This document shows, piece by piece, positions 4,759-63,196 of a stretch of DNA of 64,000 bases. Origin of the DNA: Auanema rhodensis (lineage: Eukaryota > Animalia > Nematoda); the NCBI GenBank assembly GCA_964057225.1, contig OZ059897.1, positions 12,152,001 to 12,216,000 on the forward strand, given 5' to 3'. Position numbers and translations under genes: made by a program. Below the pieces are notes generated by a model. That model saw only the letters and a program-made list of their open reading frames with translations. It did not search any database and had not been told where the DNA came from. Numbering within the stretch: the first letter of the stretch is position 1; each line of letters starts with the position of its first letter.

Positions 4759-4893
4759 CTATAGCTCATTCTAGGTTCATTCTAGCCTTTAATTATGCTT
4801 TAGTTTATAATTTTCTTTCTACTTTTTTTACATTTTTTTTCTAAAATTGTTATGCAAAATTATAAAAAAAATAAAAATAACGTACTTAAGGTA

Positions 4894-6872
4894 ATGAAGG
4901 GTATACTTGCTCTCAGCTCTTTGTTGCTGGTCCAACTGGTTGGAGCTGGTCCAGCTTCAGATCGGGTGACAAGCCTGCCATATTTTAATGGAACAGTTCC
5001 TTTCAATCATTATTCGGGATACTTGCAAGCTTCTCCTTCAAAGTACTTCCACTATTGGTTAACTGAATCTCAAACTAACCTTCCATCCAAAGATCCACTG
5101 GTTTTGTGGTTAAATGGTGGTCCAGGATGTTCCTCTGTTGGAGGTGATTGAAATTTATACATCAACTACAATAACATCAATATCTAGGTTTAATCGAAGA
5201 ATTAGGACCTTTCCATATTGCTGAGTTAGGAAAGAAAGTCTACTTGAATCCTTACTCTTGGAATAAGGTAGTATTCTTCCAATAAAAATCTATTAAATAG
5301 TTAAAATTTCTTTATAGTTTGCAAATGTATTGTTTATTGAATCGCCAGCTGGAGTAGGTTACTCTTACGAAACAACCTTTGAGCTTAGAACTGATGATGA
5401 TGAAGTTGCTACCAATAACTATAACGCTTTGGTATGTTATCGAATAGTAAATCGTAATTTCATATATGTTCGTATTCCAGCTTGAGTTTCTCAAAAAATT
5501 CCCCGAATATCGTGAACGTGAGTTCTACATTACTGGTGAATCTTATGGAGGTGTTTATCTTCCAACATTAGGATACAAAATTATTCAAGATAAGAAGAAC
5601 TTTCCAAACTTTAGAGTAAGAAATAAACAAATAGATGTATACATATCAATCTGAATATAGGGTATGGCTATTGGTAATGGAGTTCTTAATGTTCATAACA
5701 ATTACAATACTATGATTCCTCTTTATTATTATCACGGAATTATTCGAGACGAGTAAGATATATCAGTGATTTTTAAGAAAAAAACAGTTTGACTTATTAA
5801 GACTTTACAACAAATTAAAATATCAATGCTGTAATGGAGTAATCGAAGGATGTAACTTCTATGATCTTTTCCATCATTCTGAATGCAGACCTATGGTTTT
5901 GGAGGTATTGATATTGAAGAGAAATTCCTTAAATTTTATAATTTTTAAGGCTCTTGATGCAACAAATGATCTTGATCCTTATAACCTTTATAACACATGC
6001 TATTTGGGCGGTGATCCAACTTTTAAGAAGAACTTCATGCACAAAAGTTTACGTAAAATGGCTGGTATTCCAGACAGTATTCAAAAGCCAAAGCAAGAAG
6101 ATACATCTGTGAGTTGTTTCTTTTAAACTTATTCATAAAATCTGTTAATATTTAGATTCCACTCTGTGCTCAATCTCAGAACACTGCCACTTACATGAAT
6201 TGGCCAGAAGTACGTAAAGCTCTTCATATTCCCTCTTCCATTGGTAGATGGACTGATTGCAAGTAAGATTCAGAAAGATAATTCTATTTTTTATCTTTTA
6301 TTATCAAAATTTAAATTATTTTCTTTATTTTAATGTTTTTAGTGACAAATTTTATGCTCTTTATAAAACAACTCATTTGGATATGACACCTGAAGTTGAA
6401 GCTATTAGTGCTGCAGGTGTTAATGTAAGAAATCAAATTTCCGAACAAATCAATGATCATATTCTTAATAGATTCTTTTCTATAACGGAGATGTTGATAC
6501 AGTATGTAATCATGTTATGAATGCTGAATTCATTTCATCATTAAACAGAACTATTATTGTAAGTTTTTTAAAAATTTGTTCTTTTAAACTTTAAATTCCA
6601 TTTGTAGGGAAAAGAACGTGTTAACGAACCATGGAGATACAATGGAGAAACTCCAAGTGTCGCTGGTATGCAAATCAGATATGAAGGAAGTCAGATATAC
6701 AAAAATTGAAAATATTTATTTTTATTTTTATGAAATTTCAGATTTGGATTTCTTAACTGTTCGTGGAAGTGGACACTTTGTACCTCATGATAGACCAAGA
6801 GAAGCTCTTCAAATGATTTATAACTTTATTAAACGTAGAGATTATTCTGATGAACTTCCAACTGTATTTTAA
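4894..6872 (+). CDS. Serine carboxypeptidase, family S10 (cathepsin A / lysosomal protective protein-like), 12 exons
   Basis: Signal peptide [18 protein letters not shown]; motifs [19 protein letters not shown] and [10 protein letters not shown]; catalytic motifs GESYGG (Ser), [10 protein letters not shown] (Asp) and GSGHFVP (His). All 11 introns splice in frame. TAA at 6870-6872 is followed by AATAAA. Confidence 0.95.
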
Positions 6873-7136
6873 TTTAAAAAAATAAATCAATAATAATATA
6901 ATTATAAAAATTAATTTTATTTGTTTTATTATAATTGATTAGTATAGATAGTTATTATTAGTTTTTCTTTATATTAATTAATTTATAAAAATAAACTAAA
7001 AATTTAATGACTTGATATATTATCATTTCATTAACCATTATACAATATACAATGAAAAAACTAGAAGAAAAACATACTGAATTTGCTTTTTGAAGATAAA
7101 ACAATCAAAAGCAAACCTAACTGGATATGAATGAAT

Positions 7137-7169
7137 ACTGATAGTTGATAAGAATATAAAGTATAAAAG
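7137..7169 (+). promoter_or_regulatory. GATA sites plus TATA box for saposin gene 1
   Basis: ACTGATAG at 7137, TGATAA at 7146-7151, and the nematode-type TATA GTATAAAAG at 7161-7169, about 60 nt before the ATG at 7229. Confidence 0.55.
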
Positions 7170-7228
7170 AAATTTTAAGTAAAAAAAGAATTGAGTTTTT
7201 TTGAGTTAAAATACATACAAATTTCAAT

Positions 7229-8083
7229 ATGTGGAGAAAAATATCAATTCTTCTTCTTTTTGTATATATAACTACTATAAGTTGTGATCCATTACCAAAA
7301 GATAATGATATTATTGTTACACCTGTTGATCCAGATATGGTATACATTTAAATTTATTTTAATATTAATTATTATCAATTTAGGAAAAATTTAAATTCCC
7401 TAAAGCTCTTTGTGTTCCTTGTAAAGTTATTGTTAAACTAGCTAGCTTAGGTACTACTAATCCAATTGGAAAAGGAGTTCGTTTTATTCTTTTACAATAA
7501 TTTCTCGTTTTTTACTTTTTAGGTATCGATGGGATTATGCTCATTCGCTTTACCTGGTTACGGTAAGCATGGTTGTGGACCTCTCATTGAGGTATGTTTA
7601 TGAGATAAGCTTTTATAAAATTAAAAAGAAAACAAATAATTTATTTTGAAGGTTGGATCATTCTTCTTAAAACGTGTTAAGCCCTCGGCAGTTTGTCAGA
7701 AGATTAAACTTTGCAAGAGTAAAGCTGAAACTGAAGAGAGTATGATGAAACTTCATCCAGTACTTTCTGAAACTCTTAATGTATTACTATCATATATTAT
7801 TTTTGGATATCATATCTTTTCAATTGTAGATTCTTGGTGAGAGCTCTCGTAACCTCGGTTCTTCTGCAAATAACACTGAAGTTCATAATTTCTTTAACGA
7901 ATTCGTTAGAGATTTAAATCTTGAATTCAGTAAGTTTAACCATATAAACTTAAACTTAATTTTATAATTTAAGACAAAGAATTCACTCACGATCAAGTTA
8001 TGGATTTCATAGATGACCTATCAGGAAGATTTATGGATGCAGCCAAGCATTTAATTGATAATAAGGACAAACTTGTAGATTAA
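7229..8083 (+). CDS. Secreted saposin-like protein 1: cationic saposin-B domain plus acidic C-terminal extension, 6 exons
   Basis: Signal MWRKISILLLFVYITTISC; six-Cys pattern LCVPCK...GLCS...HGCG...VCQKIKLC; then an extension of about 90 aa ending DNKDKLVD*. Five introns splice in frame. Confidence 0.85.
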
Positions 8084-8330
8084 ACATTTTCTTTACATAA
8101 CCTATGCACTTTCACATATATATTTTCAACTTTTTTTGTGATTATTAACACTATTACTATGTTTTTTATTTATTTTATAAGCATTAATATTATTATTTAA
8201 TAACTTTTAAATTTTATTTTTTTTAGAATGACAATTTATAATTTTTTAACTGATAACATATTAAATAAACAAATTGTGATGACTACTTAAAGCTATTGTC
8301 ATATTATTATTTTGTACTATTTGGTTGAAA

Positions 8331-9183
8331 ATGTGGAAAAAAAGTTTAATTTTTTCTATTATTCTAGCTGTCGTACTTGGACATGAACATCAAGGTATTA
8401 CTATCAACTTTGAACTTTTCATGATATAACTCGTTACAATTACAAATCTAAATTTGAATTATACATTTCTTATAGATGATCCAGAGTATAGATGCAAAAA
8501 ATGTATTGATCTTCTCACTATTATTAGTAATTCAAAGGTTATTTTCTTATAAACATATTAATAAATATCTTATTTATTATTTTAAGGCAGCTGATTTGAT
8601 TTTCTGTAATGTAGAATTTACTGCTGCAGATTGTAAAAAATCTAGAAGACTTATTGAACATTATAGTGATATTCTTGGACCAGAAACTACTTGTTCAATG
8701 GCTCATGCTTGTCCACCTACGCAGATTTCCCGGCGTCTTGAAATATCAATGAAAACTGGTCGATTTTTTGATATTCTTTTTGGAAAACCAAGTGCAGCAT
8801 TCGATATGCTAACTGGTAATCTATTATATTCTTGAAAAACTAATAGTTATTGTTCTGTGCTCTCAGAAACCACTAATGTATTAGGTGGAGCAGCCAGTGG
8901 AACTGTTGAATTAGCCAATGGAGTTGTTCAAACAGCAGCAGGAGTTTTATCTGATACAATGAATAAAGTACCGCTTGCTGGAGGCTTACTCTCTGGTGTA
9001 ATCAAAGGAACAGCAAGTATTTCCAGATAATTCATAGTTTTATTTTTATTTTTTAATACTTAAGATACTGTTAATGGCGTAGCAGGAGGTATTAGTTCTA
9101 TCCTTCAGGGCGCAACTAAGGGAGTAGGAGATTTCTTTTCTGGATTAGGATCTACAAGCAGCAGTTTCTTTGGAAAACGATAA
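8331..9183 (+). CDS. Secreted saposin-like protein 2: compact saposin domain plus Gly-rich 11-mer-repeat tail ending in GKR, 5 exons
   Basis: Signal MWKKSLIFSIILAVVLG; Cys pattern RCKKCI...FCN...DCK...TCSMAHAC; tail ...ETTNVLGGAASGTVELANGVVQ...GVGDFFSGLGSTSSSFFGKR*. Four introns splice in frame. AATAAA follows the stop. Confidence 0.8.
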
Positions 9184-9617
9184 CTTGAAGAAGAAAAACA
9201 AATAAATATTTGAAATAAAATATTTAATTTTCAAGATTAAGACGCACAACCGCTTCAATTGTCTAAGATATATGAAATGACATCTTCGATAATATTCTGA
9301 AGTGAGTAAGTACGTCGTTTCAAGTAAAGTTTGTTAAAGTTTTTAATCTAAGTTTAAAATAATATTTTTTTAACTCATACTCATGTATGTGTATGTATGT
9401 TTGTATGTACATACATATATATATATATATATATATGTATATAATAATATTTACAAGCCTATCTATCTATAACTAAATATCAATTTGTAATCATTATTTA
9501 AAAAAACCATTTTATAATCATTACAAATGTAAATATTTATTAAGAAGATTGTTTAATAGCTGCTATTATATAGATAGACAAGTTGATATTAATTCATTTT
9601 TATAAAACATTTTCTGA

Positions 9618-10144
9618 ATGACTTCTTCGCTATTTACAACCTTCATTATATTTTCTTTATTTATTACTTATACTGAAAGTAGATACCGTAAATATGCTGC
9701 TACTGATAGTGAGCAGGTAATATTATAATTTATAATTTATATAATTTATTTTTCTTTTAGACTTTCAAAAGAAATCAGTTTTGCGATTCATGTGAACGTA
9801 TTGTTGGGGAAGTTTTCAATCAAATTCCAAAGCTAGCTAACTTCACAATTCTTCAAATGAGAAATGGCGTAGAAGTAAGTTAACAGATAAAAACTTTGTT
9901 TTTTTTTCAAATAATTGTTCTAGAAATTTTGTGATACCCGATTAAACAAGTTTGAACCTGTTCGAGACCTTTGTCACAGAATTAACGGTGATGTATGTTA
10001 CAATTCTGGGAATAGTTTAACTAATAGCTATTACAATTTCAGATGATAGAGCCATTTTATAACTATATTGTTACAAAAGTTGATCAAGATGCTCCGAAAA
10101 AATGGTGTAACTTCGTAAAACTTTGTAAACCATCTGAAACTTAA
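9618..10144 (+). CDS. Secreted saposin-like protein 3 (caenopore/SPP-type), 4 exons
   Basis: Signal MTSSLFTTFIIFSLFITYTES, a short pro-piece ending TFKR, then FCDSCE...KFCD...DLCH...PKKWCNFVKLC, a canonical saposin-B cysteine spacing. Confidence 0.9.
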
Positions 10145-10984
10145 ATATATACTTTGTGTATTTATAAAAATAACATTGACCTTTTTGTAAATTGTTTAGA
10201 AAGATTCTTCTTTGAAATTATCAGTTTTAATTTTCATTTGAAACGTTTGCCATCAAATACCATTACAGATGGCAATCCGGCAAACACCACAAGAAACCTG
10301 TTCTCTTTTACTATCAGTTAACGGAAACTTTCCTTTTTCATTTAATTTCACATCTGTGAATGTATTTATTTCTGAATTAGATTTCAATTTTGGTTCACTA
10401 TCTTCGAAAATCAAACAACTGTTTGATACAACCTGTTGTTTCTTTTCCCTTTTCTGCAAATGTAAATGAAAAAAGACAAAAATCTCGAATGAATGACTTT
10501 ATTGTACGAAGTGCAGTTGTTATGGTAAAACATATCCAATTTACAAAGAATATCAGGCACAGCTTTGAAATTCAGATATTGGATGATGACCAGATACAAC
10601 AACAAGACCAAGAGAAACATCTAAATAGATGCTTTAGAATAATACAAGAAGGGAAAACATCAAGTTGATGGGGTCGGAACAATCCGTGGAATGTTTAGGC
10701 AGTTGGTGTGGGAAGTTATCACATTGGGACATCTAATCGGTGGAACTACAGGTAAAGGTAGGGAGGAAGGTATGAAGTAATACAATCTCAACAGAAAATC
10801 CGAGACTGTATTTGGGGGGAAGGGGGCTTTTAATACAATTTTTGGTCAAATCGCTGAGTTACTGCAATGTAAGGTAGATATGAGTAGGTGGAGTAGAAAA
10901 GCATGTAGAATACTATGGCTATGTCGACACGTAAGCCAACTAAGTCGATTAGTGATCGTCTGTGGCTTAGACGATATGACCTTC

Positions 10985-12623
10985 TTAGTATCCTGGGGCA
11001 GTTCTTGGTGGTGGGCAGTGGTCGCAACCACCTCCGACTCCTGGCTCTCCTGGGGCTCCTGGCTGTCCTGGGGCTCCGGCGTTTCCTGGGGCTCCATCGA
11101 GTCCAGCATCTCCTGGTGGTCCTGGTGGTCCTGGACGGCTGTTTCCTGGGGTTCCTGGTTGTCCTGATTGTCCTGGTGGTCCTGGTGGTCCTGGTGGTCC
11201 TGAAAAAACATATGTTATAAATGATTCAATTTTTTAAATAGTAATATTATCTTACCAGCTGGTCCTGGAGTTCCTGGAACATCGGTGACAATTCCTGGCT
11301 GTCCTGGGGCTCCTGGTTGTCCTGGGGCTCCGTTGTTTCCTGGTGCTCCTGGTGGTCCTGGTGGTCCTGGTGGTCCTGGGCGAGCATCTCCTCCTCCGGA
11401 TCCTGGGGCTCCTGGGGCTCCTGGGGCTCCCTTTGGTCCTGGACGTCCTGGTGGTCCAGCTGGGGCTGGTGGGCAGGTGAAGCAGAAATCTCCCTCGGAT
11501 GGCTCTTGGTCTGGGCGAGCATCTTGTCCTGGTTGTCCTGGAGCTCCTGGTTGTCCGTCAGATCCTGGAAGACCGTCATCTCCTGGAAGACCTGGTGGTC
11601 CAGCCAATCCAACTCCGCAAGAGCAGCAAGTTCCAGCTGATCCTCCAACAACAGCCTCATCAGCGACTGGTTGTCCGTATCCTCCGTATCCGGCCTCGTA
11701 GGTGCTAGCTCCGCGGGCAACAGCACGACGGCCATGATATCCAGTTACTCCGGCGGCATGACGCTTGTAGTGAACATCACGACGAAGACGTCCCTTGACT
11801 CCTTGAACGTTCTCGAACTGAAACAATGAAATCTAAGTAAAGTGATGGATATATCGAAAAGGAGGGTAAGCTTTCAGAAGTTGAGGGAGTGATGTTTTCT
11901 GATTTTGTAATCTGACAGATTTCGTCATCTTTGAGGATTTGGTGATGACAGTTGTCAAAACAAGTTGAAAGGGAGAAAGAAATATGTCTTAGTATTAGCT
12001 AATTAGCCCAGTACCCATACTACATATATTTGTAGATGCTAGAATAAAGGAGGATATAGTCAAGTCAAGGCGAGGCTAGATAGACGAATAGCCAATTTGA
12101 CTGAAGAACCCGTTTTTTCCTCTTTTCTACTTTATAAAGCTAATGGTTATTTCTTTTGTTGTCTATCTATTATAAGAATAAATCAGAATAAACAATTCAC
12201 ATAATAAACAAAGATTAAGAGAAAATTGACATGGAATTCATATGCTTAACTCAGTGATCAGAAATGACACGAAAATTTGCGATCATTCCAGAAACTTTGA
12301 GTTTATCCTTTATCAATTACCCTCTCTTATCCCATTTTATCAAGGTAAAGAAATAAATAGCAAACTTACACGTCCATATTCACTCCAGAGTCCATCAGTT
12401 CTGTGGCGGCAGAATTCAACCTCGTTTTGAAGGGAAGACTGAACATGCTGCATGTAGTTGTAGAGCATTGGTACAGCAATAATGGCCGTCAAAGTAGCGA
12501 CGGTGGAAATCGCGATTCCTAGATAGAAATAGATGAGCTCATATTAGAGTGAATATTAATACCGAAGAATGCCAATTTGCGGAGAGACTCAGCCTCCTGG
12601 AGTTCGTGTTTGGGATCAGACAT
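10985..12623 (-). CDS. Nematode cuticle collagen, col-12/col-13-like group; exons 12623-12563, 12518-12370, 11817-11256, 11199-10985
   Basis: Col_cuticle_N region [57 protein letters not shown], furin-type RLRR, CCSCG, Gly-X-Y blocks interrupted by FCFTC, and C-terminal [19 protein letters not shown] lies directly before the ATG. Confidence 0.97.
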
Positions 12624-22490: not shown

Positions 22491-22593
22491 GGAGGGGAGA
22501 GTACGACTGATCAACAGATTGTTAGAGAAAGAAATATAAAACAGAAAAGGAAAAAAGCTAGAGGGTGAGAAAGAACGAGGGATGGCTGATGTA

Positions 22594-22608
22594 AAGAAAG
22601 AGAGAAAA

Positions 22609-22679
<71 letters not shown>

Positions 22680-22731
22680 GAGAGAGAAAGAGAAAGGGAA
22701 AGAGAAAGAGAAAAAGAGGGAGGGAAAGAGG
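22594..22731 (+). repeat. (GA)n / purine microsatellite
   Basis: About 140 nt of GAGAGA/GAGAAA repeats, directly visible. Confidence 0.95.
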
Positions 22732-25700
22732 GAAAATAACCGGTTAGAGGTAAGGAGCTATGGCATAACCACTCTAAAATATAGAACACTTAAACCCTAA
22801 GCCGCTAATTTCTGCTTACTCTATTGAATCCAGTAATACCTACTTAGTGGATTTGATGACCATGTTTTCCTTTCACCATGCTGGTGCTCCCCCATTTGAT
22901 CTCTGTCTAAACTAGAAAATGGAACAGTTTTCATCAAACTTCAAACAAATATTAATTTTGCAGATTTTACTGTGTTGTTTATTTCTAAATCTTGTCTAGA
23001 TGCCTAGCTAATGCCCCGATCTACTGGAAGAGAAAGTGAACGAGATGGGAGAACGGAAGTTTGGCGCCGATTGGCGGCCACCGCGACTATGGACGTGATC
23101 ATAATGACACACGACACCGCCAGTCCGCGAGCCTGCTCTAGAAGACAACATGGAACAATTAGGCCGAAGAAAAGCGAAATAGATGCGGTGAAAGTTGCAT
23201 CTATCTGGACATGAAAGGAGGAGAAAGGGAGAGGAATAGCGGGAGATGAATAAAGACGACGAAGAGAAAAGTTTCAGTCTGCAAACACATTCAAGACAGA
23301 AGCTAAAAATGTGAAGAAAAAAAAGTGGAAGTGAAAGAAATGTTCCAGCTTTTCATTGAAACTAACGGAAGCAGACAATTTGTTGGTAAAGTCCTCACTG
23401 GTATAGCAACAAGCATACATGATGGGTGTAAAACATCACAAAAATCTAGAGTACAGAACATAAAAACAGAGAAAGTAAAAAAAATGAGGGCTGTAACGAA
23501 ATAAAGAGATCTGCAAGTCACAATCGTTCGCTTCATCGCATATGGAAGTTGCGGCTTCTGTTATTGCTATAGCTAAGACGACGCGAAGCGATAATGATGA
23601 GGAAACTGAGAAGAGAAAAAAAATGTTTTCTATGAATAGAATTAGAAATTAAAAGAAATTATATGTCTTACGATAGAATTATATAGATAATATCTATTAC
23701 AGGTTAAATAATAAAGGATAACTAGGAATAAGTTAGAATATTTGATTAAAAAAAAAAGAAATACTTGAATTACTATTTGTAATAAGATATGAATTCTCTT
23801 AGTTGTTAGAAAATAAGGTAAAAAGATAAAGAGAAAGCAAAAAACAAGAATTTATAATTATTCTCAAAGCATTAAAACGTATAAAGTAAGCAATTAAGAA
23901 GATTACGTATAGTTATAAACGCTAAAATGCTAGTTAATTGCTCATAACTACTAGAAAAGCAAAAAAAAACAATGAAAAGCTATAAAAATCTGTCTATCGT
24001 TTAATACTTAATCATCAATTGAACTAAACTAAAAAAAGAAATTATAAAATTTTTAAAGAATAGATAGTAGTTGTAAAGTTCAGTTGAAAGCTGAATAAGC
24101 TTGTGATGTTTGTTCTCCATTACGATATTATGGTGATAAGGTTCAATAAAACCATAACCAAGAAAACAAATTTAAAAAAAGAATATTAATCATTTGAAAC
24201 TAATATTATCAGTGAATATTATACTTTTTTTATTATTTAAAAAAGGAATTAAAGAATAAAACAATAAAATTATAATATAGTTTAAGTAACTTTTGAAAAC
24301 AAAACCCCGAAATAGTGTCATTTAACAAATTTTTCTCTTTTCTCTGACAATTAGAGAAAAACATAAGTTCCTCATGTCGTATTATATCCAACATTATGAT
24401 GAACAACTGTTCGTTATGAAGAATAGTTAGTATATATGTATATATTCAAAAAGATAATAAGATATAAAAGATGTCAATTACATAAAATATTATATATTAT
24501 AGATAGATAGATAGGCAGGATATATTATACTTGCTTGAAAATTATAAAACATTAATTATTCACATAAATGAAATATTATTATCAAATAATCCTAACTATG
24601 CTCAAATTTATTGTGACATACCAAATATTTCTAGCAAATCAATGAATTGTTATATTTTTCTACAAAAAGAATAATCAAAATAACATTAGTACGTGTGTTA
24701 TAACTAATTATGTGACAAAAGGAAAAAAAAGGTATATTCAAAGTTCAATTCATTAGAAATAAATCAAATTGTTTTCATTTTTCATGAAAATAACTAAATT
24801 TGAGAGAAATTGGAAGAAATATGGATGAAATAGAAGAAAATGTGACTAAGCTAGCTTAAGCTTATGTCAATCTAGTACTACACTTTTCTGAAATGAGTAC
24901 AAAGAGGATCGAGGTTTGCCTTTTACAACTGTTCTTTTTGAATTTGTAACTAAAGAATAAGAAAGAGATAGTATAAGAGAAAAAAAAGATAAAAAGAAAC
25001 GACAGAAGAGAACTTATGCTGTTTGTACTCAAAAAACGTCACAAAAACTAGAGTGTGAGCATGCATGAAGAATATCTTTAGACTTATGACGTCGTCCACT
25101 AACACAGTTGCTCAATGGAAAAATGCTATGCAAGGTCAATGCGGTTCAAAAACAAAGAAGATGACAGCTTAGAGTAATATATGAGATCAAAACCTATTCT
25201 ACGTTCAGGCTAAGCGAGATCAAAAGATTGAAGGTATGCAATACTGACCTGTTGGCACGTAGTTTTGATGAAAATGAAACATTTGAGCAACGCTGTCATA
25301 CTTCACGTGATATATGATCAATGTGCATCATGAGACGTGAGCATAAATGACTTAATTAGAATATGCTGTAGGTTTATTGCATATTCATCTGTATGATAAC
25401 AACTTTATAATGTCATTTCCGTTTCAATTAGCTCAATCACTTGATCAGTTTAATCTTTAAGAAATGATGTTTTCAGCCAATTAATTACGATTAATTGTTA
25501 ATTGATATCATTCAGAAAGTTTTTTTTAAACAAAATTAGAAGCTAGATGAAGAAAATATAATTCTATATAAGTTTATAATATTTATATAATCGTTTAAAA
25601 TATTAACTTATATTCATATAATCCTATAGAAAAATGCAAAAAAAACCTTTGAGCAAAAACTAATTTAGAAGATTCTAAAGAAATCACAAATAGATTGTAA

Positions 25701-61100: not shown

Positions 61101-61949
61101 ATATGCATATTTTGAAATTACAAAGCTGGTCATGATGCCGTAAAACATATTTCTACTTCTATTTTTAACCATTTCCGACAATGTAATAGTAATAAAAAAT
61201 TTTGAACTTAAAACTGAAAATACATAATTCATCATGATAATAAAAATGATTCGAAGCAACTTGATGATAACTGTGAATAGACTGAATAGATATTATGCAA
61301 ATATCTAATAATAATAATGAAAAGTTCATTAAATATATATTTTCTGTAAAATATATTTACAAATGCTTTTGTTTTACATATACATGTTGAAAGTTAAATA
61401 ATTTTCGTGTTCTAAGTGCAGAGTAGCAAGTTTTCAAATTAAATTCATGGATATGCAAAGGAAATAAAGTTTTTTTTGTATTCATTTTCTTCTCAAAGTT
61501 ATTATGGGGGTGTAGATTATATACTTGATATATACTTATCAGCATATCAATGACATTCTTTCAAGAATATTCAAATAGTTTTCATAAGAAGAACAAACTT
61601 TTTTTTTTTCATTTAGGTTGATGAATGGAATATATATATAGATATAGATATATATCTTCTCTATTTTATTTGAATGATCATTGACAAATGCAGGTTGTTT
61701 GACTTTAAAAGCTGCTATAACTAGCCAATTGAAAGTTGTGAAAGATCGACTGAATACGGACATAATGACGTCAAGAAAACTTTTTTTCATCTTGCTATTG
61801 AAACTACTGGACGATTATCTCCATCGTTTATTAACAAAGATTCTAGATACAAGGAATTGAATCTTTAGGAAGTGAGAAGAATGTCGGAAATGCAAGACAA
61901 AGATACATTATTAAGAAAGAAAAGAAGGAAGGGAGTAAGATTAAGCGAC

Positions 61950-62011
61950 AGATAAAGAGAGAAAGAGGGAGAGAAAGAGGGAGAGAAAGATAGAGAGAGA
62001 GAGGGAAATAA

Positions 62012-62042
<31 letters not shown>
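61950..62042 (+). repeat. (GA)n / GAGAGAAAGAGG purine repeat
   Basis: Directly visible. Similar tracts occur at about 26540, 29800, 51500 and 57980. Confidence 0.9.
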
Positions 62043-62043
<1 letters not shown>

Positions 62044-63196
62044 AAAAGTAAAGACGTAATATTAAAAAAAAAAGAAAAATGAGAGGGAGATTCAAAAGTG
62101 AATGACTTAACATTATCAAACTTTCATACGCATGAATTTGTTACAAAAACTTGAAAAAAATGACTTCACAGATCAATTGAAACTAATATTAAAAACCTAA
62201 TGAAAGCATTTTTTTAATTTTCAATATATTTGAACAAATCAAATACTCGGACGAAAAGTCAGAAATTGGACATGTATACTCTCCAAGTTCTTCTTTGCCT
62301 CTCTCACTCTATAAACTTCCGGTCTACTGTCCATCAAGCTAAACTGAGATCGCATGACATCACTTTAACAAATAAAGCTATGATCTGAACCTGACGAGAA
62401 TGTTGGGAAAGGAAAAGTATGGAAATAGGCTAGAAGTGATCTAGCTTCAGAGTTTGAAAAAGGCGGAAACGAATCTTCACAACATTCATCATTTTGATTT
62501 AATTCGATCATTCTATGATGGTCAGTGTTAAAAAAAGCTTTCTGAGCTGATTTACTTAAATTTCTTCACACCCACATCCTCCCTCACGTTTTATCATCTC
62601 AAATTATCTCTGTTATACTTCCGGCAAAGGAAAAAAAAAACTTATTTTAGTCTCTAGAGAATCCTAATATTGTCAATTGGTCAAGTTATAGACTCTTTGA
62701 TGACATCATTGTAGCATAATTCTCCATCATCATCGAATATAATATCAAATCGTCTTTGAATCATAATACTAGTTCTAATTTTGGTTGGATGGATTATGAA
62801 CTACGTTGGAACATCCATATAAAATTTAATTTGCCAACTCCCACAACTTTTCGTCTATTTTAGAAAAAAATGGTTTAGTAATATATATATATATATATAC
62901 ATTCAATCAAAAATCACCAGAAGGTCTATTCTAAATAGCTAAACCTACTCATGCAATGAATGGAAGTCATATGCGTTTCCTATTGTTTATAACAAAAAAA
63001 AACGCTGAAAATACTAAAAATATATAACTTTATAGAGCATTAATGACGTATGTAGCTTTAACTATTGCATCATCATAACAAGAATATAGTTAGTCCAAAG
63101 GATTTAAAGAAAAAAAAATGCAAAGCAAGCCAATTGCACGCATGCTAATAATGTCATTGTGAATTATATAATATTCAATAATTTTTAGATTTTAAT

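What the first reader, a model, noticed from the sequence alone, without database searches (positions are those of the whole stretch)
8331..9183. Saposin fused to eight Gly-rich 11-mer amphipathic repeats with a terminal GKR amidation signal
Seen: after the saposin domain and a dibasic SRR, the tail falls into an 11-residue register: ETTNVLGGAAS / GTVELANGVVQ / TAAGVLSDTMN / (KVP turn) / LAGGLLSGVIK / GTANTVNGVAG / GISSILQGATK / GVGDFFSGLGS / TSSSFFGKR*. The consensus is G-h-x-x-h-h-x-G-h-x-x. Known: 11-mer (11/3) amphipathic helices bind lipid surfaces in synucleins, perilipins and apolipoproteins; Gly-zipper helices form pores; G-K-R is the standard signal for basic-residue trimming and alpha-amidation; and nematode caenopores are usually a lone saposin domain. 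Inference: this is a two-part membrane-active precursor, either a targeting or chaperoning saposin plus an amidated helical-hairpin pore former, or a secreted lipid-particle protein. I do not recognise this architecture.
Basis: partly seen in the sequence, partly recalled or inferred. Interest (0 to 1): 0.8.

Follow-up and report, generated by a model that had tools for sequence, protein, structure and literature searches.

The report
Saposin-like protein with lipid-binding tail
A nematode gene appears to encode a secreted saposin-like domain joined to an 86-residue glycine-rich helix built like the lipid-coating helices of perilipins and synuclein, a combination found in no database or paper searched, though its splicing, expression and function remain untested.

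Summary
A five-exon gene (8331-9183, + strand, all GT-AG, introns 48-81 nt) reads through to 207 aa. It has a signal peptide, a compact six-cysteine C-x2-C...C-x5-C domain, a linker and an 89-residue tail ending G-K-R-stop.

The tail's 11-residue register is real:
- z = 9.2 once K-V-P is removed.
- A blind search recovers the same 3-residue skip (z = 7.7, 0 of 150 shuffles).
- No other open stretch in the window comes close.

Drawn as a 3-11 helix, one half is V/L/A/T/F/I. The other half is G/S/N/T, holds 17 of the 18 glycines and has only 7 charged residues. This is ALPS/perilipin-like chemistry with net charge near zero.

My best reading is a secreted saposin-like protein with a conditionally folding lipid-surface anchor, probably made in the gut. 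An amidated pore-forming precursor is less likely: the RR site is one of six dibasic pairs, GKR conservation cannot be tested, and AlphaFold gives no hairpin.

No relatives were found, but this species has no close kin in the protein database, so the blanks are weak. Pfam does not recognise the saposin domain. The scan has not noted this on other DNA.

The parts
8251..8256 (+). TGATAA (GATA-factor site) 80 nt upstream of the ATG
   Evidence: The upstream paralogue has the same motif on the same strand at -83 (7146). TGATAA is not enriched window-wide (92 found, 107 expected), so this is only a hint of shared regulation, possibly intestinal.
8331..8394 (+). Exon 1: start codon and signal peptide (about residues 1-17, MWKK plus a hydrophobic core ending VLG), then HEHQ
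   Evidence: The signal peptide was judged by eye (n-region KK, 13-residue hydrophobic core). Donor is AAG|GTATTA.
8476..8537 (+). Exon 2: start of the six-cysteine domain (C28-x2-C31, first helix)
   Evidence: Acceptor is TTCTTATAG|, donor AAG|GTTATT.
8587..8815 (+). Exon 3: rest of the six-cysteine saposin-like domain (C49, C58, C78, C84; last Cys codon 8710-8712), R91-R92 (8731-8736) and a 27-residue linker
   Evidence: No Pfam SapB hit even at E<=10. AlphaFold2 on this exon alone gave pLDDT 46, which is uninformative.
8867..8964 (+). Tail segment 1: three 11-residue units (residues 119-151; E119 is split across the intron, first base at 8815)
   Evidence: Best period 3.65; hydrophobic moment as a 3-11 helix 0.34.
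8965..8973 (+). K-V-P, a 3-residue skip in the 11-mer register
   Evidence: Blind optimisation places a 3-residue deletion at residue 154. AlphaFold2 keeps the helix continuous here.
8974..9016 (+). Tail segment 2, part in exon 4 (residues 155-168 and the first base of N169)
   Evidence: Donor is CAA|GTATTT.
9065..9171 (+). Tail segment 2, part in exon 5 (to F204). Together with 8974-9016 it gives about four and a half 11-residue units, and the four Phe lie near the end.
   Evidence: Best period 3.69; hydrophobic moment 0.43-0.49.
9172..9183 (+). G205-K206-R207 and stop TAA: formally a signal for basic-residue trimming and amidation
   Evidence: Its function was not tested.
9201..9219 (+). Two AATAAA polyadenylation-type hexamers (9201, 9214) 18-31 nt after the stop

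Best explanation
This is a real, lineage-specific nematode gene for a secreted two-module lipid-interacting protein.

Module 1 is a compact saposin-like six-cysteine domain, derived from the neighbouring saposin-like (caenopore/nemapore-type) genes. Module 2 is an 86-residue glycine-rich tail. With 20 % Gly it is probably unfolded in water. On a lipid surface it would fold into one long, perhaps kinked, 3-11 amphipathic helix.

The tail's apolar stripe (V, L, A, T, I, with F at the end) would insert into lipid packing defects. Its uncharged G/S/N/T face would stay in the interface. The tail therefore works like ALPS motifs and the perilipin/synuclein 11-mer regions, as a weak, length-dependent 'Velcro' anchor. 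It would hold the saposin domain on poorly packed or curved lipid surfaces, such as ingested bacterial membranes, vesicles or lipid droplets and emulsions in the gut lumen or lysosomes, or it would stabilise protein-lipid particles.

Shown: the gene structure in silico, the cysteine pattern, the 11-mer periodicity and the face chemistry. Inferred: splicing, secretion, folding on lipid, the site of action and the target lipid.
For: - Gene model: clean GT-AG structure with an open joined frame. GC steps at every exon boundary and AATAAA follows the stop.
- Cysteines: the pattern C-x2-C...C-x5-C sits between two same-strand genes with the same pattern. These give sub-threshold SapB_2 (E = 0.002) and SapB_1 (E = 0.07) matches.
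- Periodicity: 0 of 2000 shuffles; 11-mer register z = 9.2 and blind z = 7.65; an outlier among 182 open stretches in the window.
- Helical wheel: the apolar half is V8 L7 A7 T6 F4 I3. The polar half is G17 S9 N5 T3 with 7 charged residues.
- Composition: hydrophobic 0.39, aromatic 0.045, charged 0.10, moment 0.34-0.49. Table 1 of PMC5889406 gives GMAP210 ALPS 0.37/0.05/0.05 with moment 0.48, and Nup133 0.38/0.05/0.10 with 0.44. It lists lengths of 89 aa for alpha-synuclein and 90 aa for Plin3.
- The ALPS definition and the 3-11 helix description come from PMC6164224.
- AlphaFold2 folds exon 4 as a single helix 4-47, pLDDT 73.
- Four small runs of about 20 Mb from one study each hold 47-64 % of the sampled words of 7200-10150. 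By my count of exon and UTR 31-mers, about 0.4-0.55 would be expected from spliced RNA.
Against:
- Pfam does not recognise the domain as saposin. Its C1-C6 span is 57 residues, against 82 in neighbouring gene C.
- The joined domain was never folded.
- No orthologue or paralogue of the tail exists in anything searched, so there is no evidence of conservation or selection.
- ALPS and perilipin helices are cytosolic, and an extracellular counterpart has no precedent that I found.
- Lipid binding is wholly inferred from composition.
Confidence: 0.48

Rival explanations
1. Processed precursor. A convertase cuts after R91-R92, a carboxypeptidase removes K206-R207, and G205 is used to amidate F204. 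This releases a free saposin domain and a free amidated peptide of about 110 residues, or smaller pieces, that permeabilises microbial membranes through GxxxG-mediated helix association.
For: - The sequence ends in G-K-R-stop. By my rough estimate from typical residue frequencies, only about 1 protein in 1000 ends this way by chance.
- KR is the commonest flank of amidated nematode peptides, and the Gly donates the amide (PMC4196577).
- G8-x3-G1' recurs at most repeat junctions.
- An S10 carboxypeptidase gene lies 1.5 kb upstream.
- Another note of this scan (s1-401387, unchecked) reports amidated Gly/Leu peptides elsewhere in this genome.
Against: - R91-R92 is one of six dibasic pairs in the protein and has no P4 arginine.
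- The tail's net charge is +1, or -1 after trimming. It has an uncharged polar face and a low moment, unlike cationic lytic peptides.
- No hairpin is predicted.
- The amidating machinery is described for neuronal dense-core vesicles, whereas the promoter hint (GATA at -80) and the neighbours point to gut-type expression.
- GKR conservation cannot be tested.
Confidence: 0.17
2. The tail is a removable pro-piece or intramolecular mask. It covers the lipid-binding surface of the saposin domain during synthesis and is degraded on activation. Precedents are the labile C-terminal extension of hookworm Na-SLP-1 and the acidic tail of the gene next door.
For: - Na-SLP-1 carries a C-terminal extension of about 30 aa that was unresolved and progressively truncated (PMC3184995).
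- Neighbouring gene A pairs a +9 saposin-like domain with a -9 tail of the same length, the classic charge-neutralising pro-piece layout.
- An amphipathic helix could dock onto the hydrophobic face of the saposin domain.
Against: - Gene B's domain (-2) and tail (+1) have no charge complementarity.
- A mere mask needs neither 86 residues nor a strict 11-residue register with glycines confined to one face.
Confidence: 0.13
3. Self-assembling extracellular material. The hendecad (a-d-e-h) repeats form straight or right-handed helical bundles or fibres, making a coat, plug or matrix component related in role to the secreted glycine-rich protein clusters noted elsewhere in this genome.
For: - The hendecad core pattern fits.
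- The tail is rich in Gly, Ser and Thr.
- A scan note (s1-384012, a follow-up by another agent that I did not check) describes a cluster of secreted Gly-rich genes with a GATA-plus-TATA promoter in the same genome.
Against: - 20 % Gly on the solvent face disfavours stable coiled coils.
- Seven and a half repeats is short for a fibre.
- Fusion to a saposin-like domain and the flanking saposin-like genes point to lipids, not matrix.
Confidence: 0.1
4. The five-exon model is wrong or the gene is dead. Exons 4 and 5 would be chance open frames, or remnants not joined to the saposin exons, and the protein would end at the stop at 8835.
For: - There is no RNA evidence.
- No homologue, not even the protein itself, is in the databases.
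- The acceptor at 8866 (GTGCTCTCAG) is less T-rich than the others.
Against: - The chance of 50 and of 39 open codons in local non-coding composition is 0.013 and 0.035.
- Both intron phases match.
- GC jumps to 41-42 % exactly in these two exons.
- The protein-level periodicity is the strongest in the window.
- AATAAA follows the final stop, not the stop at 8835.
Confidence: 0.08

Closest known systems
Nematode saposin-like antimicrobial proteins (caenopores / nemapores, e.g. C. elegans SPP-3, SPP-5; PMC10506718)
   Same: It has a signal peptide followed by a six-cysteine C-x2-C...C-x5-C domain. It sits in a tandem array with other such genes. A GATA site in the promoter fits the gut expression typical of spp genes, which I state from my own knowledge.
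   Different: Nemapores are lone or tandem saposin domains, and that survey excluded proteins with extra domains. Here the domain is shortened (loops 17/8/19 against 29/13/27 in neighbouring gene C) and unrecognised by Pfam. It is followed by about 120 further residues.
Hookworm Na-SLP-1 (PDB 3s64; PMC3184995)
   Same: It is a nematode saposin-like protein with an N-terminal Sap domain and a C-terminal extension, which is flexible and labile.
   Different: Its extension is about 30 aa, and the passages I read mention no repeat or periodic structure for it. There is no sequence similarity: exon 3 finds no PDB chain.
Perilipin 11-mer regions / Plin4 giant helix, alpha-synuclein, exchangeable apolipoproteins (PMC5889406, PMC6164224)
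   Same: It shares the 11-residue (3-11 helix) amphipathic periodicity and the length class (86-89 aa against 89 and 90). Like Plin4 it is enriched in Gly, Thr and Val, with low hydrophobicity and a low moment. One proline interrupts the repeats, as prolines do in apoA-I.
   Different: There is no sequence homology (no Pfam hit at E<=10). It is secreted rather than cytosolic. Charged residues are far fewer (0.10 against 0.15-0.35). The repeats are degenerate, not near-identical.
ALPS (amphipathic lipid packing sensor) motifs of GMAP-210, Nup133, ArfGAP1
   Same: The polar face is made of Gly/Ser/Thr(/Asn) with almost no charge. There is about one large hydrophobic residue per turn. The composition fractions are nearly identical (against Table 1 of PMC5889406).
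   Different: ALPS motifs are 20-40 aa, cytosolic and without an 11-mer register. This one is 86 aa, periodic, behind a signal peptide and fused to a saposin-like domain.
Amidated nematode neuropeptide precursors (FLP/NLP; PMC4196577)
   Same: It has a signal peptide and a C-terminal Gly followed by Lys-Arg.
   Different: Those precursors yield peptides of 5-24 residues flanked by basic sites on both sides and are neuronal. Here the only upstream dibasic site outside the folded domain lies 112 residues before the C-terminal Gly.

Membership tests
Saposin-like proteins (SAPLIP, saposin B-type domain) | Six cysteines in the order C-x2-C ... C ... C ... C-x5-C | tested here: met
   Cys at 28, 31, 49, 58, 78 and 84, gaps 2/17/8/19/5. 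The loops are shorter than in neighbouring gene C (2/29/13/27/5).
Saposin-like proteins (SAPLIP, saposin B-type domain) | Match to the Pfam half-domain profiles SapB_1 / SapB_2 | tested here: not met
   No SapB hit for exon 2 or exon 3 even at E<=10. The neighbours give sub-threshold hits: gene A SapB_2 at E = 0.002, gene C SapB_1 at E = 0.07.
Saposin-like proteins (SAPLIP, saposin B-type domain) | Four- or five-helix bundle fold with three disulfides | tested here: inconclusive
Only exon 3 could be folded by reference. It gave pLDDT 46 and one helix.
Saposin-like proteins (SAPLIP, saposin B-type domain) | Secretory signal peptide | tested here: met
   Judged by inspection of residues 1-17. 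No predictor was available.
3-11 (11-mer repeat) amphipathic helices: perilipin / synuclein / apolipoprotein type | 11-residue periodicity with apolar a, d, e, h positions | tested here: met
   z = 9.2 in register and blind z = 7.65. Apolar columns are 2, 5, 6 and 9. Best periods are 3.65 and 3.69 in the two segments.
3-11 (11-mer repeat) amphipathic helices: perilipin / synuclein / apolipoprotein type | Sequence homology to the Perilipin, Synuclein or Apolipoprotein families | tested here: not met
   No Pfam family at E<=10 for exon 4 or exon 5, and no PDB sequence match for exon 4. It is an analogue, not a member.
3-11 (11-mer repeat) amphipathic helices: perilipin / synuclein / apolipoprotein type | Unfolded in solution, helical on lipid | not testable with these tools
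   This needs circular dichroism or NMR with and without liposomes or oil droplets.
ALPS motif | Polar face of Ser/Thr/Gly with few or no charges; sparse large hydrophobic residues | tested here: met
   The polar half is G17 S9 N5 T3, with 7 charged of 47. The charged fraction is 0.10. There are 26 V/L/I/F/M residues in about 23 turns.
ALPS motif | Cytosolic peripheral membrane protein that senses curvature | tested here: not met
   The protein starts with a signal peptide. Curvature sensing cannot be tested here.
Amidated peptide precursor | Gly followed by basic residue(s) at the C-terminus of the peptide | tested here: met
   F204-G205-K206-R207-stop.
Amidated peptide precursor | Conservation of the Gly-basic signal in orthologues, and an N-terminal cleavage site that delimits a peptide | tested here: inconclusive
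   No orthologues were found. RR91-92 is one of six dibasic pairs.

The most novel reading that the evidence does not exclude
This would be the first extracellular counterpart of the perilipin/ALPS class. A secreted saposin-plus-3-11-helix protein would act as a protein emulsifier or apolipoprotein analogue in the nematode gut. It would coat ingested neutral-lipid droplets or poorly packed membranes and hand lipids to hydrolases, in an animal that makes no bile salts. Lipid-packing-defect sensing would then have been invented independently outside the cytosol.
Probability: 0.2. Interest if true: 0.75.

Novelty: new variant of a known kind. Interest (0 to 1): 0.5.

Why it matters
Saposin-like proteins are the most widespread antimicrobial and lipid-handling family in nematodes, and they are treated as lone saposin domains. 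A member that carries a long, uncharged, 11-residue-periodic amphipathic helix would couple a lipid-extracting fold to a lipid-packing sensor. So far that kind of helix is known only from cytosolic proteins (perilipins, synuclein, ALPS tethers) and, with charged faces, from apolipoproteins.

If it holds up, it gives:
- a small and easily made test case for how such helices read lipid surfaces outside cells;
- a possible new mode of lipid digestion or microbe targeting in worms;
- a natural scaffold related to the saposin-lipoprotein nanoparticles used in membrane-protein work.

If the tail turns out to be a discarded pro-piece, the finding is a modest curiosity in a fast-evolving gene family.

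Tried and rejected
RNA check
I sent nothing covering 9718-9753 to any search tool afterwards. Gene C was searched only from 9761 on.

Relatives, all blank
- Pfam on every exon.
- PDB sequences with exons 3 and 4.
- Word search with the 119-aa ORF restricted to exon 3 and with exon 4.
- Exhaustive phmmer of exon 3 against 1.84 billion representatives. Its only two hits, P0001 and P0002, are internally repetitive proteins whose score is summed over 6-8 weak stretches, so I reject them as spurious.
- Metagenome contigs with exons 4 and 3, and prokaryotic genomes with exon 4.
- ESM Atlas features for exons 4 and 3 scored 0.80-0.83, in the range reached by shuffled sequences.
- Exact look-up of the 119-aa ORF.

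Control for those blanks
- The cuticle collagen of the window finds nothing closer than 50-58 % identity, spread over unrelated nematode clades. The species has no near kin in the database, so blanks for a fast-evolving small protein say little.

Other negative results
- tblastn of the model against the window found no paralogue of the tail.
- Pairwise alignment of the three neighbouring saposin-like models was not significant.
- Folding exon 3 alone was useless (pLDDT 46).
- I rejected a recent DNA tandem duplication as the source of the repeats.
- I rejected a transmembrane reading, because no segment is hydrophobic enough (mean Eisenberg H about 0.2-0.4).
- Window-wide TGATAA enrichment was rejected.
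- The literature searches found no saposin plus 11-mer fusion.

Full report
**What is there**

Window 8331-9183 (+ strand) lies in AT-rich DNA (about 27 % GC) of a nematode. A cuticle collagen gene lies 1.7 kb downstream on the other strand (Pfam Collagen E = 5e-12; nematode collagens are its only relatives).

Reading the sequence and joining five exons gives an open frame of 207 codons:
- The exons are 8331-8394, 8476-8537, 8587-8815, 8867-9016 and 9065-9183.
- All four introns are GT..AG, of 81, 49, 51 and 48 nt.

Independent signs support the boundaries:
- Exon GC is 30/27/36/42/41 %, against 22/10/28/17 % for the introns and 17-20 % for the flanks.
- In local non-coding composition, 50 and 39 open codons have chance probabilities of 0.013 and 0.035.
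- AATAAA occurs at 9201 and 9214, right after the stop.
- Exon 4 has no upstream in-frame ATG and no signal peptide, so it cannot be a gene of its own.

**Splicing could not be checked with RNA**

Four small runs of one study hold 47-64 % of the sampled words of 7200-10150. That is about what exons plus UTRs of the three genes there would give. By my count, 0.40 of the 31-mers are in coding sequence and about 0.53 with UTRs.

I sent nothing covering those places to any search tool afterwards.

**The first domain**

After a signal peptide (judged by eye) come six cysteines at 28, 31, 49, 58, 78 and 84, giving C-x2-C-x17-C-x8-C-x19-C-x5-C. This is the saposin order with shortened loops.

- Pfam does not see it.
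- A fold of exon 3 alone was uninformative (pLDDT 46).
- The two same-strand neighbours have the same cysteine order. Gene A (7229-8083, 203 aa) has gaps 2/23/11/19/5 and gives SapB_2 at E = 0.002. Gene C (9618-10144, 127 aa) has gaps 2/29/13/27/5 and gives SapB_1 at E = 0.07. Both hits are below the Pfam cut-offs.

So 'saposin-like' is the most economical reading, but it rests on pattern and neighbourhood, not on a profile or a fold.

**The tail**

Residues 119-207 are 20 % Gly and 52 % G/A/S/T.

Periodicity:
- Hydrophobicity has one dominant period at 3.6-3.62 over the whole tail (0 of 2000 shuffles).
- The two halves peak at 3.65 and 3.69, which is 11/3.
- The mean BLOSUM62 column score in an 11-residue register is z = 3.7 ungapped and z = 9.2 once K-V-P (152-154) is taken out.
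- When I let a script choose any deletion of 0-5 residues anywhere, it chose 3 residues at position 154. That gave z = 7.65 against shuffles optimised the same way, and none of 150 reached it.
- As a control, the strongest helical periodicity among all 182 stop-free stretches of 60 aa or more in the six frames of the window is 9.3. That stretch is exon 4 itself. The spliced tail scores 19.4.
- There is no DNA tandem repeat, so the register is kept at the protein level.

Repeat anatomy:
- Columns 2, 5, 6 and 9 are apolar, the a-d-e-h pattern of hendecads.
- Columns 1 and 8 are glycine, which gives a G-x3-G at most unit junctions.

Helical wheel as a 3-11 helix:
- The apolar half is V8 L7 A7 T6 F4 I3.
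- The polar half is G17 S9 N5 T3, with only seven charged residues. Seventeen of the eighteen glycines sit there.

Composition and charge:
- Fractions are hydrophobic 0.39, aromatic 0.045 and charged 0.10.
- Net charge is +1, or -1 without K-R.

AlphaFold2 on exon 4 alone gives one helix over residues 4-47 (pLDDT 73) that runs straight through K-V-P.

**Comparison with known helices**

Table 1 of PMC5889406 lists the following.

| Helix | Hydrophobic | Aromatic | Charged | Moment | Length |
|---|---|---|---|---|---|
| GMAP210 ALPS | 0.37 | 0.05 | 0.05 | 0.48 | 38 aa |
| Nup133 ALPS | 0.38 | 0.05 | 0.10 | 0.44 | 21 aa |
| alpha-synuclein | 0.47 | 0.02 | 0.24 | 0.30 | 89 aa |
| Plin3 | 0.37 | 0.01 | 0.23 | 0.35 | 90 aa |
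| Plin4 | 0.35 | 0.002 | 0.15 | 0.257 | 968 aa |

PMC6164224 defines ALPS motifs by a polar face of Ser/Thr/Gly without charges. It describes 3-11 helices as the form taken by the 11/22/33-residue repeats of apolipoproteins, synucleins and perilipins.

The tail therefore combines ALPS chemistry with the perilipin/synuclein register and length. It has no sequence homology to any of them. It works like them on paper, but it is not a member.

**Processing claims**

- R91-R92 is one of six dibasic pairs in 207 residues and has no P4 arginine.
- G-K-R-stop is a correct amidation signal in form (PMC4196577). By my rough estimate it is uncommon by chance, about 1 protein in 1000.
- The described nematode machinery is neuronal.
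- There are no orthologues to test conservation.
- A neutral helix with an uncharged polar face is not what lytic peptides look like.

I therefore rank the processed pore-former below a lipid-surface anchor.

A third reading is a removable mask. It has precedent in the labile 30-aa extension of Na-SLP-1 (PMC3184995). It also fits gene A next door, whose +9 domain is paired with a -9 tail. Gene B shows no such charge pairing, however.

**Relatives**

Nothing was found in any of these searches:
- Pfam and the PDB;
- 1.84 billion protein representatives, whose only two hits are repeat artefacts;
- the word-indexed 5.8-billion set;
- metagenome and prokaryote contigs;
- Atlas features and the exact look-up;
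- the rest of the window.

The collagen control shows the nearest database relatives of this species at only 50-58 % identity. These blanks therefore show that the architecture is undescribed in what I could search. They do not show that it is unique in nature. Three literature searches found no such fusion.

**Context**

Four same-strand genes lie close together, 357, 248 and 435 nt apart:
- an S10 carboxypeptidase (Pfam E = 3e-19 and 1e-9);
- gene A;
- this gene;
- gene C.

Genes A and B each have a + strand TGATAA at -83 and -80. The motif is not enriched window-wide, so this is only a hint of shared regulation, possibly intestinal.

Notes of this scan, which I did not check, add three things:
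- They call the animal a rhabditid.
- They report a GATA-plus-TATA promoter on a secreted Gly-rich gene cluster (s1-384012).
- They report a family of putatively amidated Gly/Leu peptides elsewhere in the genome (s1-401387). I could not compare it with this tail.

**Left out**

It was built only inside scripts from window.fa for statistics.

**Verdict**

- The best reading is a secreted saposin-like protein with an ALPS/perilipin-like 3-11 lipid-surface helix (confidence about 0.5).
- It is a new variant of a known kind, of moderate interest until RNA and orthologues are seen.

Noticed in passing
window 7229-8083 (+): Gene A is a six-exon, 203-aa model with all introns GT-AG (44-60 nt). It has a signal peptide and a six-cysteine saposin-like domain (sub-threshold SapB_2, E = 0.002) with net charge +9. 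A 90-residue acidic tail (net -9) with helical periodicity follows. The layout resembles a cationic antimicrobial domain with a neutralising pro-piece.
   Followed up: partly
window 9618-10144 (+): Gene C is a four-exon, 127-aa model. It is a lone saposin-like protein with canonical cysteine spacing 2/29/13/27/5 (SapB_1, E = 0.07) and no tail.
   Followed up: partly
window 4852-10144 (+): Four same-strand genes (S10 serine carboxypeptidase, then three saposin-like genes) are separated by only 357, 248 and 435 nt. Genes A and B both carry a + strand TGATAA at -83 and -80 from the ATG. This suggests a co-regulated, possibly operon-like digestive or defence cluster. Trans-splicing and expression were not tested.
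   Followed up: partly
window 10846-11826 (-): A cuticle collagen gene forms a GC-rich island (44 % against about 27 %). Its closest database relatives are only 50-58 % identical and come from several unrelated nematode clades. This species therefore has no close kin in the protein database.
   Followed up: yes
window 9383-9445: A (TG/TA)n microsatellite lies in the spacer between this gene and gene C.
   Followed up: no
window 22511-22789 (-) and 61865-62119 (-): Long CT-rich low-complexity tracts read as (SL)n in one frame. They are probably simple-sequence DNA rather than genes.
   Followed up: no
proteins P0001, P0002: The only two 'hits' of the exhaustive protein search are highly repetitive proteins with 6-8 near-identical units. 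They reach E of about 1e-5 by summing weak matches, a reminder that multi-stretch hits to short queries can be spurious.
   Followed up: yes
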